63,925 nt of DNA, filler included, from Ministeria vibrans ATCC 50519 (GCA_943704425.1; 12 parts of 12 records of this genome joined end to end with filler, not necessarily neighbours in it), one strand, 5' to 3'; counted from the first letter of the whole stretch, positions 19,185-27,671 are shown. Notes: generated from the sequence alone by a model not told the origin. A program made the numbers and translations.

Positions 19185-22100
19185 ATGATTTTTCACATTC
19201 TGCTTGGCCTTCTGCTGTTCACACACACAGCTCAATCAAGTACGATCAATCTCTCACGACAGTACACCCAAGTGAGTGACCCCACCTTTTACCCGTATCA
19301 CGCATGCGCTCCCTCGCTCACAGCCCCACGCTTTGCTCGGGCTGTCTTCCTCAACGGCGTCGCTCAAGGCGTGCAGGGCCAAGTGACATTCGCTCAGGCG
19401 AACAGAACCGCCCCAACTATCATCACGCTGGAATTTACTGGGCTCACCCCCAACGACGATCGACTGTACATTGGCGCACGAAGGGTCGTCACGAATCAGT
19501 GCCCGAACAGCCATCATTTCTCTCCGTAATCAGATCACAGAAGAACGACCACACACCCACACAAACACACACACACACACACACTCACACACACACACTC
19601 TCTCTCTCTCTCACACACACACTCGTAGGACACCCGCGCCAAACCCCTTCGCTTCATGTACCCCAAGTACACCGGACGGATGCCATGCGGGTGACATTTC
19701 TGGCCGCTTTGGGTGAGTATATTTGGCTCATGAATCTGTATCTAAGACTTTGACAGGTTGGCAAACGGCGTTCGCGTGTTCACCGATTACAACATGACAA
19801 TGTTTGGCTACGAATCCATCATGGGACACGGCATGTTTTTGAAATCCAGCACGAAGAGCCATGTTGCGTGTGCCAACATTGTGCCAACACGACGTGTGCG
19901 TCGAGCCGTCGCCACCTTTCCACCTGAGTCTCTCATTCTTGGCACCGTTACGCTCGAGCAGGACTACGACCAGTCCGATGCAGCCACGACGATCATAATA
20001 CTGGTCGACTACAACCGTGGTTTGCCGTGGTCAATTCCACTCAACGGCACAGCACACCATTGGGCCGTCACCATTGCACCTGTCCAGGCCGGTGACAACC
20101 TCGCAAGCACGCCAGATGAGCAACGCTGCCTCTCTGCCGGCTCGGCGCTTCAGGAAACCATCACGTCTCTTCAGGGCGATCTAAAAAACACATCAAGTCT
20201 TGCTGCTGAGGTGGAGCGTCTATGCCGTCTCGAGGCGCTTGTAGATTTAGAGCACACAGTGCAGGATTGTCAGAGAAGAGTTGGAAATTTGACTGAGCTG
20301 CACGGAACCTTGAAAATCCCCGCCAATGCTGTCTTCAACGACATCTTTATGCCTTTGAGCGGACCTTTTTCCGTCATTGGCAAGTCTGTTCGTGTTGAGG
20401 CCTCCGACCAGTCCCCATACTCGCTTGCTTGCGCCACTTTTGAAGAGGTGCAACACAAGAATAATAATTATGCATCCTATACGTCTTTTATTTTTTACTC
20501 ATCAACATCGTCATTATAAATTTACCTACTTTTTGTTTATAGGTGGCACCGACGATGATTGAGGTAAGCTATATTCATACCCAAAGTTATTATTATTAAT
20601 TTAATATCATTCTAATATTCTCGGCAGACGGTGTTTGTTGACGGAGGCGTATCTGGATCCATCCGATTTGAGCAATTTGAGGAGTTCTCACCCACAATCA
20701 TCACAGCGTACACCCAGGGCGCCACTGACACCCCGAACCCCTGGCACATCCATCAGTTTCCGTTGCAGTCCGATCAGCCGTCGACTGTGTGTGCGACTGC
20801 CGGTGGCCACTACAACCCGAGCAGTGTAGACGGAACGGCAAGCAACTACACGCTGTTGTGCAACCCTTTGTCGCCCTTCAAGTACAGTGCATGCGAACTC
20901 GGCGATCTTACTGGTCGATGGGGACCCCTTGCCAACGCGCTCAACGTCTCCTTCCTTGACTTCAACACTCCCCTCTTTGGCCCACAGGCGGTCCAAGGGC
21001 GATCTGTTGTTCTTCACAGCAATGTCACCGGAGCACGCGTCGGTTGTGCCAACATTGGCCGCAGCACCCCCGAAATGTTGACGGCTGTCGCCACGTTCAC
21101 TGGACCCGAAATGGTCGGCACAATGACCCTGCGTCAGCCGGCCAACGACCCTCTTGCTGCAACCACCATCCTTGTAGATGTCTCCTTTATCAATGGTACT
21201 CAGATTATGACTGGTCTTGCCTGGTCCGTTCACGAAAATATGGTATGCATATTCTTAATAATTATTTTGTTTTTTTTCTCGTGAATGATAATAATAATAA
21301 TAAATTATTATTTAATATAATATTATTATGTTTTATTTTTATTAATATTATCATTATTAATTTTTGTTTTGGACTTGCGCGTCTGAATATGCAGGTGGGC
21401 ACCGATCAACTCCTAGCTTCGCCCTTCAGCCGGTGCACCTCAGCCGGTATCATCTTCCAACCACCCGCAGTGACGCTCTACGAGGGATATTGTAGTCCGA
21501 CATGCCAGCGCTGCTGCCTTCTTGGCAAGCTCTATGAGAAACACGCTCGTCTCAATGTTCCCTCACGCGTACTCTACACCGACGAGCGACTGCCCCTCAG
21601 TGGAAACAACTCTGTGATTGGGCGGTCGATTGGCGTTCACAACGCACCAAATCCTTCCGTGCATGGATCGCGCCTTGGATGTGCCACAATCAAAATGGTA
21701 GGAGAAATAACACTGAAACAACATTAAAAACGTGTTGCAAGATTAATATTGTCATGAACAACGATGCATGTTTATTACCACGTATTGGAGTTCTCATTCT
21801 ACTTTCATTTCTACACTTTAGGTTCCTGTGGCGAGCGCCACTGCTGCCTTTGTTGCCGGTGAAAGTGCGGGCATTGTGACTTTTTCTCAAGGTCTTCCTG
21901 AAGACCCCACCGTGGTCAGTGTGAACGTCGTCGGTCCCGCCGCCGACACTGCTCTCGTCGTCCACGCGAACCCACTGACAACTGCCGACGGTTCCTGTCC
22001 CGCCGCCGAGCTGGGTCCTCTCTATGCGGCTCCATTGGCACCCAACAGTGGGAACATGTGTACGTCTGCTTCACCCTACCTTACCGCATTCGGCATGTGC

Positions 22101-25100: not shown

Positions 25101-27671
25101 TCCATTCCGTATGCTCGTGTTTCTTGGACACTACACAGCGGAACGTGCTCTTCGAGTAGCACCTCGGCCATTGTGTACAATTTCTCGCAGACCGCCGGTG
25201 TGCTCACTCTGCCGGCACTCGGCTCACAGCGCTACTACGCAACCGTCTCAGGCCTATCGCTAACCGCTGTTGTCGGCGGCACATCGCTGGTCCTTGTGAA
25301 TCCGGAAAATGGACAGCAGATTGGCTGTGCCGAGTTGCAGACGATGCCGGAGCGACGTGTCACCGCTCATGTCGACATGGTCAACGGTGTGCGGGGAACG
25401 GTTGAGTTTGCGCAGACCTACGCCACCGATCCGGTGCAGGTAAACGTGTCGTTGACTGGGCTCCACAGCTCCTCAAATACCCTCAGTGTGCATACACTGC
25501 CCAGTTTGAATGCCGACACTGGCAATGGTGTTGCCGATCCAGCAGACTGTCCTTCGACAGTGCTCAACCCGTTGAACGCCTTAAATACCAACGAGTGCTC
25601 ACCAAGCTCGCCGTCCAAGTGGTTATCGTGCGCGATGGGCGACATTTCCGGCAAGCTGGGCACCATTCCGACGTCGGGTCTTCTCAGCGGAATCTCTGAC
25701 CCGACCCTCTCATTATTTGGGCGGTTTGCTCTGTCACGACGCTCCATTGTTATTCAAGCACAGAGCGGTGCCAATGCAGCGTGCGGCACCATTGGCTACT
25801 TTGGAACGGTGACGAGCGTGGCAGCGAGCTTTTCGTCACCCGTGCTGGGCACACTCACCATGCGTCAGGTGGCAAGTGCTCCCTGGGCGGAAACCACCCT
25901 TGAGTGGTCGTTGCAATCGTCGGATGCGAGCCAGGCGTCGACCGTTGTCGGCGATCACACTTGGCTGGTGGCAGACACGTGTTCTGCGAGTGTGTACAAC
26001 CCAACAGGGATCAGCGTGGCGGCGAGCAGCGTGTGCACCGCAGCGTCGGCTGCTTTGACGTGTGCCGTGGGAGACGAGAGCGGCAAGCATGGCGCGCTCG
26101 CAGTGCCAAGTGGTGGAATGCAACTGGCAGTGGACACTGCCTTGCCGCTGACCGGAGTGTTTTCGGTAGACGGAAAGAGTCTCGTGGTCGACGGGGTGGG
26201 CTGTGAGGCTTTGCAGGAGCAGCCAGCGAGGGTTGCCACCGCGACCTTTACGGGCACAGCAGCGTCGAGCATGATCACGGGAACGGTGACGATGACCCAG
26301 GCGTATGCTGGTGAGGCAACTCGCATAGAGGCGTCTTTGAGTGGACTTCCCGCGGGCGGAGCTAACTGGTACGTGTATACACTGCCTGTGCAAGGCAACA
26401 CATGCGGCTCAGACGCCACGGGACAGCTGTTCAATCCGACAGGCAGCGGCATTGGTGTTGGCGACCTGACTGCGCGCGTGGGCATGCTCACTTCGCAAAC
26501 GCTGGTTGACAACGCGGCGTTTGTGTTGCCCCTGTTCGGCGAGGGCAGCGTTGTCTTGCGCTCGTTGGTGCTCGTAGACCCGACGACAGGTTCACCGCTT
26601 GCGTGTGCCACAATTGAGCGGTCCGGTGTGACAGTTCAGACTGGGCGCGTGACTTTTGACAATGGTCAGCTACGAGGCAGTGTCACGTTCTCGCAGGTGT
26701 TGGGTGATCCGACAAGCGATACGACCATTCACGTTGACGTGGGTCTATCAACCCGTCGCCGCGCCACCGCCATCAATGGGGGTCAGTACGCGTGGGGCAT
26801 TCGCGATGGCTCTTGTGCCTCCACCGTTTCGTACAACCCGACGGGACTGTCGGGTGTCGGCTGTTCACCGAGCACTCCCAACCTTTGTGCCATTGGGAAT
26901 CTCAGTGGACGCTACGGCCCACTGCGACTTCCTGCCACTGGAGCTGACCGCGTGCTGCTGACAGATCCTCTGCTGGCAGTCCAGGGCCCTTTGTCGGTGC
27001 TGGACCAGTTCTTTGCCGTTGCCTCGATTGCCAACTCGGCCGACCTGGTCGAGTGTGCTTCGGTGGTGAATGGAACCACTGCATCCGCGGACGTCACGCC
27101 TCCAGCGTCCAGCAACCCGTCATCGGGTGGCATTAGTGGCGGTGCAGTGGCTGCTATCATTGTCGTCGTGCTTGTCTTGCTCATTGTCATTGTGGTGGCC
27201 ATTGTGGTGCGCCGCCGGCGCAATCGCAATGGTTCGTCATCATCAAGGTATCGATCGCAAGCGACGGTACCGAGCTCAGCATCTTTACCGGTGCACCTGC
27301 AGCTGCAGGGATTTGTGGACAATACTGCGACACTGGATGCGACGGATTCCGGTCAAAAGTCGCAACCACCTCCGCGTCCCGCGTCACAGCCGGACCGTCG
27401 ACTTGCGTTGTATGAGTACACGCCCCGCCACCAGGACGAGATTGCTCTGATTGCCGGGGACTCTGTTGTGGTCACCCAAGTGCTTCCCGATGGTTGGTTG
27501 CGCGCAAAGAACTTGCGCACCAAGAAGACAGGGTTGGTGCCGGCGAACTACCTTGAGGTGGACGTCGTTGTGGGCGGTGGGACGACTCGATTGGAGGAGG
27601 GTATTTTGGCGGCCGATCGCAAGATTGGAGGGCTGTCAGCGATGGGACGATCGCCCTACGATGATTTTTGA
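19185..27671 (+). CDS. Giant type-I membrane protein: signal peptide, ~16 tandem Cu/Zn-SOD-fold (Cu-only type) domains, TM helix, cytoplasmic PxxP and SH3 domain
   Basis: Signal peptide MIFHILLGLLLFTHTAQS; repeated WHxH...GGHYNP...CExGDLSGKHG...GRSVVxH...RLGC units; six short introns in 19526-21821, then a 5.8 kb last exon; TM ~27144-27209 followed by RRRRNR; SH3 ALYEY..DEI....GD....DGW....GLVPANYL. Confidence 0.9.

What the first reader, a model, noticed from the sequence alone, without database searches (positions are those of the whole stretch)
19185..27671. Giant SOD-repeat receptor: ~16 Cu-only SOD domains + TM helix + cytoplasmic SH3
Seen: signal peptide, about 16 tandem ~150-aa SOD-fold units, a 22-residue TM helix with an RRRRNR stop-transfer, then PPPRP and a complete SH3 domain; roughly 2,600 aa after splicing. 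Known: animal Cu-only SOD repeat proteins (CSRP) typically have four repeats and are secreted or GPI-anchored, with no signalling tail. Inference: this is a cell-surface protein that could both dismutate extracellular superoxide and couple to intracellular partners through SH3, a candidate ROS- or copper-sensing receptor or adhesion molecule. I do not recognise this architecture as described.
Basis: partly seen in the sequence, partly recalled or inferred. Interest (0 to 1): 0.9.

Follow-up and report, generated by a model that had tools for sequence, protein, structure and literature searches.

The report
Giant membrane-anchored SOD-repeat protein (CSRP)
This is a real, expressed gene of a marine single-celled relative of animals that encodes a 2,606-residue surface protein made of 16 superoxide-dismutase-like modules (only four still able to hold copper), a membrane anchor and an intracellular SH3 docking domain; it belongs to the already named CSRP family, whose known Capsaspora member turns out to carry the same, so far unremarked, membrane-SH3 tail.

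Summary
Spliced RNA contigs support one 8-exon gene (19185-27671, +) with an unbroken 2,606-aa frame. It encodes a signal peptide, 16 tandem SOD-fold repeats, one TM helix followed by RRRRNR, a PPPRP motif and a Pfam-significant SH3 domain.

Only four repeats (R3, R6, R7, R8) keep all four Cu-ligand histidines, the Cu-only E-x-G-D signature and the active-site Arg. The other twelve keep the fold and the disulfide cysteines but have lost the metal site.

The architecture is not unique:
- The best homologue is Capsaspora owczarzaki CAOG_08503. The literature calls it the largest CSRP (Cu-only SOD repeat protein), with 12 repeats, and it has the same TM-RRRR-SH3 tail.
- A Choanoeca flexa protein and a metagenome protein also join Sod_Cu repeats, a TM helix and SH3.
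- The same genome holds at least three paralogues. One is colinear with this gene repeat by repeat.

The two CSRP papers I could read describe CSRPs as secreted or GPI-anchored and do not contain the words SH3 or transmembrane.

Verdict: a new, record-length member of a known family. The likeliest role is a type I surface protein with a few active Cu-only SOD modules on a long non-catalytic stalk, tied to PxxP adaptor or actin-associated proteins through its SH3 tail. A receptor function is untested. Interest is moderate.

The parts
19108..19184 (+). 5' UTR (minimum extent)
   Evidence: The RNA contig X6 record 7 starts at 19108. There is no ATG upstream of 19185 in it.
19185..19239 (+). Exon 1: start codon and signal peptide (MIFHILLGLLLFTHTAQS)
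   Evidence: Joint 19239->19324 with GT..AG in X6 and X7; translation.
19240..19323 (+). Intron 1, 84 nt, in frame, GT-AG
19324..19525 (+). Exon 2: first part of repeat R1
   Evidence: X6 record 7; weak Sod_Cu match E 0.013.
19526..19628 (+). Intron 2, 103 nt, GT-AG, holds an (AC)n/(TC)n microsatellite
   Evidence: Inferred from the 83 unplaced letters of X6 record 7 between 19525 and 19756, and from GT/AG at the ends.
19629..19712 (+). Exon 3: R1 disulfide-loop part
19757..20447 (+). Exon 4: end of R1 and all of R2 (R2 = 19935-20441, with an insert of about 40 aa; no Cu site)
   Evidence: Joints 19711->19756 and 20445->20541; repeat HMM.
20543..20563 (+). Exon 5: 21-nt microexon (linker between R2 and R3)
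   Evidence: Two joints on one contig in X6 and X7; GT-AG on both sides.
20628..21242 (+). Exon 6: R3 (20649-21056, complete Cu site) and the first part of R4
   Evidence: Pfam Sod_Cu 42.2 bits; WHIH, GGHYNP, VVLH, ELGD and R-x-G-C motifs.
21395..21697 (+). Exon 7: rest of R4 (Cu site lost)
   Evidence: Joints 21241->21394 and 21696->21821; Sod_Cu E 0.0013.
21822..27671 (+). Exon 8: R5-R16, TM helix, cytoplasmic tail with SH3, stop codon
   Evidence: Open frame. X7 record 18 joins exon 7 to exon 8, and its length reaches about 27.7 kb.
22323..22742 (+). R6: complete Cu site but divergent beta-7 region
   Evidence: Sod_Cu 28.8 bits; motifs.
22791..23195 (+). R7: complete Cu site, Cu-only signature
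   Evidence: Sod_Cu 56 bits. Alignment to solved Cu/Zn SODs shows loop VII deleted and His80 replaced by Glu.
23253..23669 (+). R8: complete Cu site
   Evidence: Sod_Cu 50.4 bits; motifs.
23718..27065 (+). R9-R16: eight SOD-fold repeats without Cu ligands
   Evidence: Weak or no Pfam match. All are found by a leave-one-out HMM. The R12 model has pLDDT 91.8 and best matches C. albicans SOD5.
27141..27209 (+). Transmembrane helix (aa 2431-2453)
   Evidence: The only 19-aa window with Kyte-Doolittle score above 1.8; peak 3.96.
27210..27227 (+). RRRRNR stop-transfer (positive-inside) cluster
27366..27380 (+). PPPRP motif 8 residues before the SH3 domain
   Evidence: Similar P-x-P-R-P stretches precede the SH3 in the C99 paralogue and in Capsaspora.
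27405..27557 (+). SH3 domain (aa 2519-2569)
   Evidence: SH3_9 1.3e-12 and SH3_1 2.4e-11. Closest solved relatives are the nebulin, nebulette, LASP1 and vinexin SH3 domains.
27672..27820 (+). AT-rich 3' UTR (approximate end)
   Evidence: Inferred from the lengths of contigs X6 record 12 and X7 record 18. No proline-rich continuation in any frame. ATTAAA and AATAAT motifs.

Best explanation
The gene encodes a type I plasma-membrane glycoprotein of the CSRP (Cu-only SOD repeat protein) family.

Shown:
- One spliced mRNA carries a signal peptide, 16 tandem SOD-fold beta-barrels built as alternating two-repeat units, one TM helix, and a 153-residue cytoplasmic tail with a canonical SH3 domain.
- Four membrane-distal repeats (R3, R6, R7, R8) keep the full Cu-only SOD catalytic set: four His, Glu/Asp in place of the Zn site, Arg and the disulfide. 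Loop VII is deleted.
- Twelve repeats keep only the fold and the cysteines.

Inferred:
- The four intact repeats bind Cu outside the cell and dismutate extracellular superoxide, as shown for oyster CSRP and fungal SOD5.
- The Cu-less repeats act as a rigid glycosylated stalk or as interaction modules.
- The SH3 tail ties the protein to PxxP-bearing cortical adaptor or actin-associated proteins. This would fix its position, clustering or turnover at the cell surface rather than carry a ligand-gated signal.
For: Gene model:
- GT-AG joints across every intron in RNA contigs of two runs.
- One contig links exon 7 to exon 8 and runs on for about 3.1 kb beyond the laid stretch.
- The 2,606-aa frame is intact.
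- Strain or allele variants in that frame are 26 synonymous to 12 non-synonymous.

Repeats:
- 16 by HMM, and each is found by a model built from the other 15.
- Pfam Sod_Cu matches the whole exon at 3.7e-61.
- Scored singly, R3, R7 and R8 score 42-56 bits and R6 scores 28.8 bits, just under the 28.9-bit cut-off.
- The most degenerate repeat, R12, folds with pLDDT 91.8. Its best PDB matches are C. albicans Cu-only SOD5, TM 0.70-0.73.

Cu-only character:
- The alignment of R7 to solved Cu/Zn SODs keeps His46, 48, 63 and 120, Asp83, Arg143 and Cys146.
- The same alignment replaces His80 by Glu and lacks the electrostatic loop.

Topology:
- One TM helix, RRRRNR on its C-terminal side, and 23 N-glycosylation sequons and 62 Cys on its N-terminal side.

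SH3:
- Above the Pfam cut-offs, with the ALYEY, DGW and P-x-NY ligand-binding residues.

Conservation of the tail:
- Present in the C99 and C486 paralogues, in Capsaspora CAOG_08503, in Choanoeca flexa and in a metagenome protein.

Function of relatives:
- Oyster CSRP has measured SOD activity (PMC12217663; PMC13017621).
Against: - No enzymatic, metal-binding or localisation data exist for this protein or for any protist CSRP.
[quoted passage not shown] The colinear C99 paralogue keeps about nine. This argues that catalysis is not what selection preserves in this copy.
- R6 lacks the G-R-S motif before its His120 equivalent and scores just under the Pfam cut-off.
- The transcript evidence is short-read contigs, not a single full-length molecule.
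- SH3 partners are unknown. A complex prediction with a paralogue's proline-rich tail gave no verdict.
Confidence: 0.6

Rival explanations
1. It is a non-catalytic adhesion or recognition receptor. The SOD-fold barrels are used like Ig-type modules to bind prey, substrate or other cells. The four remaining Cu sites are relics, and the SH3 tail links binding to the actin cortex.
For: - 12 of 16 repeats have no Cu ligands, yet they keep their cysteines and fold.
- This copy lost Cu sites that its colinear C99 paralogue keeps.
- Cu-less CSRPs exist in arthropods and tardigrades, and the SOD-like oyster dominin acts in bacterial recognition (PMC13017621).
- The SH3 is closest to the SH3 domains of the actin-associated proteins nebulin, LASP1 and vinexin.
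Against: R3, R6, R7 and R8 keep every catalytic residue, including the Glu/Asp pair and the Arg. Without selection for Cu chemistry this would be unlikely over the divergence seen (about 40% identity between paralogues). No ligand is known.
Confidence: 0.25
2. It is a ROS- or copper-sensing receptor. Cu loading or superoxide turnover in the ectodomain changes conformation or oligomeric state, and this is transmitted through the single TM helix to SH3-bound signalling partners.
For: The architecture joins a redox-metal ectodomain to an intracellular protein-interaction domain. That junction is conserved from a filasterean to a choanoflagellate. A P-x-P-R-P motif sits just upstream of the SH3 and could act as an internal ligand.
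Against: There is no kinase, phosphatase or other catalytic signalling domain in the tail. No evidence exists for ligand- or metal-dependent change. The intact Cu repeats lie far from the membrane (R3-R8 of 16), which makes allosteric transmission through eight or more inert domains implausible. Clustering would be the only route.
Confidence: 0.12
3. It is an artefact: two or more separate genes, a pseudogene, or an assembly chimera read as one giant frame.
For: No single contig spans the whole transcript. Depth differs between the 5' exons and exon 8. One non-canonical 'joint' (21239->21494) appears in the contigs.
Against: - Every intron has a GT-AG joint in RNA contigs.
- The joined frame is unbroken.
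- Variants are mostly synonymous.
- The C99 paralogue has the same 16 repeats in the same order.
- The stretch before 21494 in the X17 contig is a divergent version of the window sequence. Its 30-mer is absent from the window and the assembly. I read the odd X6/X7 joint at the same place as the same divergent allele, which would also explain the split depth.
Confidence: 0.03

Closest known systems
Capsaspora owczarzaki CSRP, CAOG_08503 (XP_011270085.1 / A0A0D2X116)
   Same: - Best database hit: 31% identity over 84% of exon 8.
[quoted passage not shown]
- TM helix, RRRR stop-transfer, P-x-P-R-P stretch and a homologous SH3 domain.
- Listed in the CSRP literature as the largest CSRP.
   Different: - 12 repeats (11 complete ones in the partial record), 9 of them with a Cu site according to the review, against 16 repeats with 4 Cu sites here.
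- Capsaspora has a long proline-rich tail after the SH3; this gene stops 37 residues after it.
Animal CSRPs (oyster Crassostrea CSRP, insect Rsod, fish CUSR, frog SOD4)
   Same: - Same repeat family; hits at E 1e-97 to 1e-29.
- Short linkers, conserved disulfide, loss of the Zn site and loop VII.
- The N-terminal repeats have lost Cu.
- Oyster CSRP has measured SOD activity.
   Different: Animal proteins have 4-6 repeats (about 1,000-1,150 aa) and are described as secreted or GPI-anchored. No SH3 was found in the 130 repeat-only proteins I fetched, which include named animal CSRPs; I did not class them by taxon.
Candida albicans SOD5 (Cu-only SOD; PDB 4N3T, 5KBM)
   Same: Single-domain prototype of the repeat. 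It has an open Cu site, Glu110/Asp113 in place of the Zn site, no electrostatic loop, and is extracellular. It is the best structural match of the R12 model and a sequence hit of R7.
   Different: SOD5 is a single GPI-anchored domain of about 25 kDa, with no repeats, no TM helix and no SH3.
Choanoeca flexa EP00730_P005522 and metagenome protein P0132
   Same: Sod_Cu repeats, then one TM helix, then cytoplasmic SH3 domain(s).
   Different: Only three recognisable repeats. Choanoeca has three SH3 domains. Orthology of the tails was not tested by a tree.
Yeast Fus1 and Sho1 (membrane proteins with a cytoplasmic SH3; recalled from general knowledge, not tested here)
   Same: A membrane anchor directly followed by a cytoplasmic SH3 that recruits PxxP partners to the cell cortex.
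   Different: Unrelated ectodomains. No sequence relationship was sought or shown.

Membership tests
CSRP (Cu-only SOD repeat protein) | Four or more tandem Cu-only SOD-like domains on one polypeptide, separated by short linkers | tested here: met
   16 repeats. Gaps between HMM envelopes are 11-20 residues, alternating 18/16.
CSRP (Cu-only SOD repeat protein) | Each domain keeps the SOD beta-barrel fold and the intramolecular disulfide cysteines | tested here: met
   The C-terminal Cys is invariant and the N-terminal Cys is at least 90% conserved in 49 aligned repeats. In R10 and R14 I read the C-terminal Cys as shifted by inspection, because the alignment places a gap there. The R12 model has the SOD5 fold. 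The other repeats were judged by homology only.
CSRP (Cu-only SOD repeat protein) | Zn ligands and electrostatic loop VII absent | tested here: met
   Shown for R7 in the alignment to solved Cu/Zn SODs. The same loop length is seen in all repeats.
CSRP (Cu-only SOD repeat protein) | Many but not all repeats keep an intact Cu site and the E110/D113 signature; the N-terminal repeats have lost it | tested here: met
   R3, R6, R7 and R8 are intact. R1, R2 and the other ten have lost the site.
CSRP (Cu-only SOD repeat protein) | Secreted or GPI-anchored, with no cytoplasmic part (as described in the literature) | tested here: not met
   TM helix plus a 153-aa tail with SH3. The accepted Capsaspora member fails this in the same way, so the criterion describes animal CSRPs and does not define the family.
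CSRP (Cu-only SOD repeat protein) | Cu binding and superoxide dismutase activity | not testable with these tools
   Needs recombinant protein, metal analysis and an activity assay.
Bimetallic Cu/Zn SOD (SOD1/SOD3 type) | Zn site (His63, His71, His80, Asp83) and loop VII | tested here: not met
   His80 is replaced by Glu, there is no His71 equivalent, and loop VII is deleted.
SH3 domain (Pfam SH3_1 / SH3_9) | Profile match above the curated cut-off, with the ALYDY, Trp and Pro-x-x-Tyr ligand-binding residues | tested here: met
   SH3_9 47.8 bits (cut-off 30) and SH3_1 43.5 bits (cut-off 22.9). ALYEY, DGW and PANY are present.
Type I single-pass membrane protein | N-terminal signal peptide, one TM helix, positive charges on the cytoplasmic side | tested here: met
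   Hydrophobic N-terminus ending in AQS, one TM segment, RRRRNR after it, and glycosylation sequons and Cys only on the N-terminal side. This was judged by inspection; no dedicated signal-peptide predictor was available.

The most novel reading that the evidence does not exclude
The ancestral CSRP of the lineage leading to animals was not a free or GPI-linked enzyme. It was a single-pass receptor-like protein whose SOD-fold ectodomain was coupled, through a conserved nebulin/LASP-type SH3 tail, to cortical adaptor or actin machinery. Animals later discarded the tail. If so, extracellular superoxide or copper chemistry, or ligand binding by SOD-fold modules, was wired to the cell cortex before multicellularity. 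The SH3 tail would then give the first experimental handle on the still unknown function of CSRPs.
Probability: 0.25. Interest if true: 0.7.

Novelty: new member of a known kind. Interest (0 to 1): 0.45.

Why it matters
The 2026 review of the field calls CSRP function 'largely enigmatic'.

This gene and its paralogues extend the family to 16 repeats. The largest reported so far is the 12-repeat Capsaspora protein.

Together with Capsaspora CAOG_08503 and a choanoflagellate protein, they show that CSRP-like proteins in at least three unicellular holozoan lineages are transmembrane proteins with a cytoplasmic SH3 domain. That contradicts the general description of CSRPs as secreted or GPI-anchored. 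It also suggests a concrete experiment: identify the SH3 partners.

Comparing two colinear paralogues, one with about nine Cu sites and one with four, offers a natural experiment on how SOD domains turn into purely structural modules.

Tried and rejected
- A word-indexed search with the TM-SH3 tail alone found nothing at E <= 0.001. This blank is uninformative.
- The ESM Atlas search of the last repeats plus tail gave no usable hit.
- Complex prediction of this SH3 with the class II proline-rich end of the C99 paralogue gave no verdict: score 0.16, mark 0.34. It counts neither for nor against binding.
- Naming the organism failed. An intronless HSP70 from the same genome matches at 100% only an unnamed metagenome protein. 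The next best hits are mostly animal HSP70s, and some plant ones, at about 66-73%. An HSP90 locus was mostly N. I therefore call the source only an unnamed marine, holozoan-like protist. The runs holding the DNA include seawater and algae metagenomes.
- Alternative splicing at 21239->21494 was considered and rejected. The sequence before 21494 in the X17 contig is a divergent version of the window sequence, absent from the window and the assembly.
- I looked for a proline-rich continuation of the tail after the stop, as in the paralogues. There is none in any frame.
- The 2018 paper that named CSRP (PMC5880121) is not held, so I could not check whether it mentions the Capsaspora tail.

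
Full report
**What is there.** The window piece (places 1-31827) is contig C1788:50121-81947 of a 29.7-Mb, 2,860-contig eukaryotic assembly. On the + strand, 21828-27671 is one open frame of 1,947 codons. Pfam finds Sod_Cu in it at E 3.7e-61. Near the C-terminus it finds SH3_9, SH3_1 and SH3_2, all above their curated cut-offs. Upstream, between 19185 and 21727, shorter open frames in changing phases carry further SOD-like sequence, beginning with a hydrophobic signal-peptide-like N-terminus.

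**Gene model and expression.** One search for sequencing runs found the stretch in DNA runs of a coded 'organism A' (2011, 2022), in seawater and algae metagenomes, and in runs of 'organism B' guessed to be RNA. I laid contigs of four runs on 18700-24600. Two of them (X6, X7) show joints with GT..AG ends:
- 19239/19324
- 19711/19756
- 20445/20541
- 20561/20626
- 21241/21394
- 21696/21821

A further intron, 19526-19628, holds an (AC)n repeat that the tool skips. It follows from 83 unplaced letters in one contig and has GT-AG ends. X6 record 7 links exons 1-4. One contig carries both joints around a 21-nt microexon. X7 record 18 (6,078 nt) links exon 7 to exon 8 and runs on about 3.1 kb beyond the laid stretch, to about 27.7 kb, just past the stop codon.

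The eight exons are 19185-19239, 19324-19525, 19629-19712, 19757-20447, 20543-20563, 20628-21242, 21395-21697 and 21822-27671. Joined, they give 7,821 nt, or 2,606 codons, with no internal stop. The contig begins at 19108 with no upstream ATG. Depth is zero before 19094, so the EGF-like frame upstream is a separate gene. Two contigs of a poly(A) marine metatranscriptome match exon 8 without a difference. Of the 38 strain or allele differences seen in coding sequence, 26 are synonymous in this frame.

An odd 'joint' at 21239/21494 with AT..GT ends I read as a divergent allele, not splicing. The letters before 21494 in the X17 contig resemble the window sequence but differ too much to be laid, and they occur nowhere in the window or the assembly.

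**Handling of the spliced model.** I joined the exons only inside my own scripts, for the frame check, repeat segmentation and local comparisons. The joined protein was not sent to any database, fold or complex tool. All such searches used exon-level references.

**The repeats.** An HMM iterated from the best Sod_Cu stretch finds 16 units of about 122-187 aa. Each unit is also found by an HMM built from the other 15. Scores are 59-131 bits, except R12 at 20.6 bits (E 2e-8 for one sequence). Gaps between envelopes alternate 18/16 residues, and odd and even repeats match different Capsaspora repeats. The array is therefore built from a two-repeat unit.

Scored singly against Pfam Sod_Cu:
- R3, R7 and R8 score 42-56 bits, and R6 scores 28.8 bits, just under the 28.9-bit cut-off.
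- Eight other repeats give weak matches (E 1e-5 to 0.02).
- R2, R12, R14 and R16 give none.

I folded R12, the most degenerate repeat, with an alignment of 49 repeats from this gene and its paralogues. The model has mean pLDDT 91.8. Its five best PDB matches are all Candida albicans Cu-only SOD5, with TM 0.70-0.73. The alignment consisted of SOD-like repeats, so this supports the fold but is not a fully independent test.

**Metal sites.** The repeat alignment and the alignment of R7 to solved Cu/Zn SODs agree:
- R3, R6, R7 and R8 keep the equivalents of His46, His48, His63 and His120, Asp83, Arg143 and the Cys57-Cys146 pair.
- His80 is replaced by Glu, giving the E-x-G-D 'E110/D113' signature of Cu-only SODs.
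- There is no His71 equivalent, and the electrostatic loop VII is deleted.
- The other twelve repeats lack two or more Cu ligands but keep the cysteines. The C-terminal Cys is invariant and the N-terminal Cys is at least 90% conserved across the 49 repeats. In R10 and R14 this rests on my reading of a shifted Cys, because the alignment gaps them there.
- R1 and R2 have lost the site, as the review reports for all CSRPs.

**Anchor and tail.** Only one 19-residue window exceeds a Kyte-Doolittle mean of 1.8. It lies at aa 2431-2453, with a peak of 3.96. RRRRNR follows it directly. On its N-terminal side are 23 N-x-S/T sequons and 62 cysteines. The 153-residue tail contains PPPRP and, eight residues later, an SH3 domain at aa 2519-2569 with the ALYEY, DGW and P-x-NY ligand-binding residues. 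Its closest solved relatives are the SH3 domains of nebulin (E 6.8e-10), nebulette, LASP1 and vinexin/sorbin, all actin- or adhesion-associated adaptors. The frame ends 37 residues after the SH3. What follows is AT-rich and has no proline-rich frame.

**Relatives.** In the same genome Sod_Cu matches cluster on four other contigs.
- C99 (21606-29828) is a 2,741-codon open frame with the same 16 repeats. R2-R11 and R13-R16 of this gene each find their same-numbered partner as best match; R1 and the degenerate R12 do not. About nine of its Cu sites look intact by motif inspection. It has a TM helix, RRKR, SH3 and a long proline-rich tail.
- C486 has about 14 repeats, a TM helix, a Cys-rich juxtamembrane stretch, SH3 and a very long proline-rich tail.
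- C540 has seven repeats colinear with R12-R16, a TM helix and a short tail without SH3 in that frame.

Outside the genome, the best hit of exon 8 is Capsaspora owczarzaki CAOG_08503 (2,024 aa, partial; 31% identity over 84%). Its precomputed Pfam domains are Sod_Cu plus SH3. Its sequence shows a TM helix, RRRR, a P-x-P-R-P stretch, a homologous SH3 and a proline-rich tail. All other named hits are animal CSRP/Rsod proteins of about 1,070-1,290 aa with Sod_Cu only.

I searched 1.84 billion cluster representatives with a profile of the last repeat plus TM helix plus SH3. It gave 159 proteins at E <= 1e-30. I then classed the 174 proteins fetched so far with my repeat and SH3 models. Four carry both domains:
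- Capsaspora CAOG_08503.
- P0028, a metagenome fragment 98.8% identical to this gene.
- A Choanoeca flexa transcript with three SOD repeats, a TM helix and three SH3 domains.
- P0132, a metagenome protein with a signal peptide, three repeats, a TM helix and one SH3.

**Comparison with the literature.** The 2026 review of the field (PMC13017621) defines CSRPs as polypeptides of 100 kDa or more with 4-12 tandem Cu-only SOD-like domains. [quoted passage not shown] Its Table S1 names that protein as CAOG_08503 and lists CSRPs of two choanoflagellates. Neither this review nor the oyster study (PMC12217663) contains the words SH3 or transmembrane. No held paper combines Capsaspora, superoxide dismutase and SH3. 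The 2018 founding paper is not held. Oyster CSRP has measured SOD activity, frog CSRP is needed for tail regeneration, and arthropod and tardigrade CSRPs have no Cu site at all.

**How it most likely works.** Shown: the architecture and the residue inventory. Inferred: the protein enters the secretory pathway and ends as a type I surface glycoprotein. The four intact repeats, all in the membrane-distal half, acquire Cu outside the cell and dismutate superoxide as SOD5 and oyster CSRP do. The twelve inert barrels form a long stalk or offer binding surfaces. The SH3 tail docks onto PxxP proteins of the cell cortex. Because the tail has no enzymatic domain and the active repeats lie far from the membrane, I favour anchoring, clustering or trafficking control over ligand-gated signalling.

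The main rival is a purely adhesive or recognition role with vestigial Cu sites. In its favour, this copy has lost Cu sites that its sister paralogue keeps. A complex prediction between this SH3 and a paralogue's class II proline-rich end gave no verdict.

**Verdict.** The protein is a new and so far the longest member of the known CSRP family, not a new kind of system. Its TM-SH3 layout already exists in a public, literature-cited Capsaspora protein. What appears new is the recognition that CSRP-like proteins in at least three unicellular holozoan lineages are transmembrane proteins with a conserved SH3 tail, that they form multi-gene families of 14-16 repeats, and that Cu sites decay differently between colinear paralogues. 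Interest is moderate (0.45).

Noticed in passing
G000:C99:21309-29828 (L001, L002, L007): A paralogue with a 2,741-codon open frame and 16 SOD repeats in the same order as the window gene. About nine keep Cu sites. It has a TM helix, SH3 and a proline-rich tail of about 110 aa with class II PxxPxR motifs.
   Followed up: partly
G000:C486:45353-54505 (L003, L004): A second paralogue with about 14 repeats, mostly Cu-intact. It has an unusual Cys-rich juxtamembrane stretch (CCCNSCRCCPC, a possible palmitoylation cluster), an SH3 and a proline-rich tail of about 370 aa.
   Followed up: partly
G000:C540:1080-5327 (L005) and G000:C1412:2-2070 (L006): Shorter relatives. C540 has seven repeats colinear with R12-R16, a TM helix and a short tail without SH3 in that frame. 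C1412 is cut by the contig end.
   Followed up: partly
window 19935-20441 (R2), insert near 19990-20330: Repeat R2 carries an insert of about 40 residues in place of the Zn-loop region. It looks helical by eye (not predicted) and has two extra Cys. The C99 counterpart lacks it, and R2 has no Pfam match.
   Followed up: no
window 20400-21600: RNA contigs split into two haplotype-like versions here, differing by several percent (many third-position changes). In exon 8 they differ by only about 0.3%. One version diverges too much before 21494 to be laid.
   Followed up: partly
window 19240-19323 and 20543-20563: An 84-nt in-frame intron lies directly after the signal peptide; retaining it would keep the frame open. 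There is also a 21-nt microexon. Introns are very short (44-152 nt) and AT-rich against GC-rich exons.
   Followed up: partly
window 15456-16676 (+): An open frame with a calcium-binding EGF match (E 3.3e-6) just upstream. It is a separate gene, since RNA depth is zero between it and 19094.
   Followed up: no
window 12372-14615 (-): A 748-aa single-exon frame with DUF4062, an AAA_16/STAND NTPase domain and nephrocystin-3 N-terminal and TPR matches: an NPHP3-like STAND protein.
   Followed up: no
window 3087-5711 (+), 6384-7847 (-), 28397-29552 (+): Neighbouring genes: a PDK1-like kinase with a PH_3 domain, a C2H2 zinc-finger protein and a ubiquitin C-terminal hydrolase (UCH).
   Followed up: no
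P0002 (Logan contig, 1,463 aa), residues about 700-830: An unnamed CSRP-like protein with nine SOD repeats. A Cys-rich furin/EGF-like segment interrupts the array, which is another unusual CSRP architecture.
   Followed up: no
P0029/P0175 and P0035 (Logan contigs): Unnamed proteins with 8-9 Sod_Cu repeats ending in a TM helix and a short basic tail. P0029 is 47% identical to the Capsaspora CSRP, so it probably comes from another filasterean. More unicellular TM-anchored CSRPs therefore exist.
   Followed up: partly
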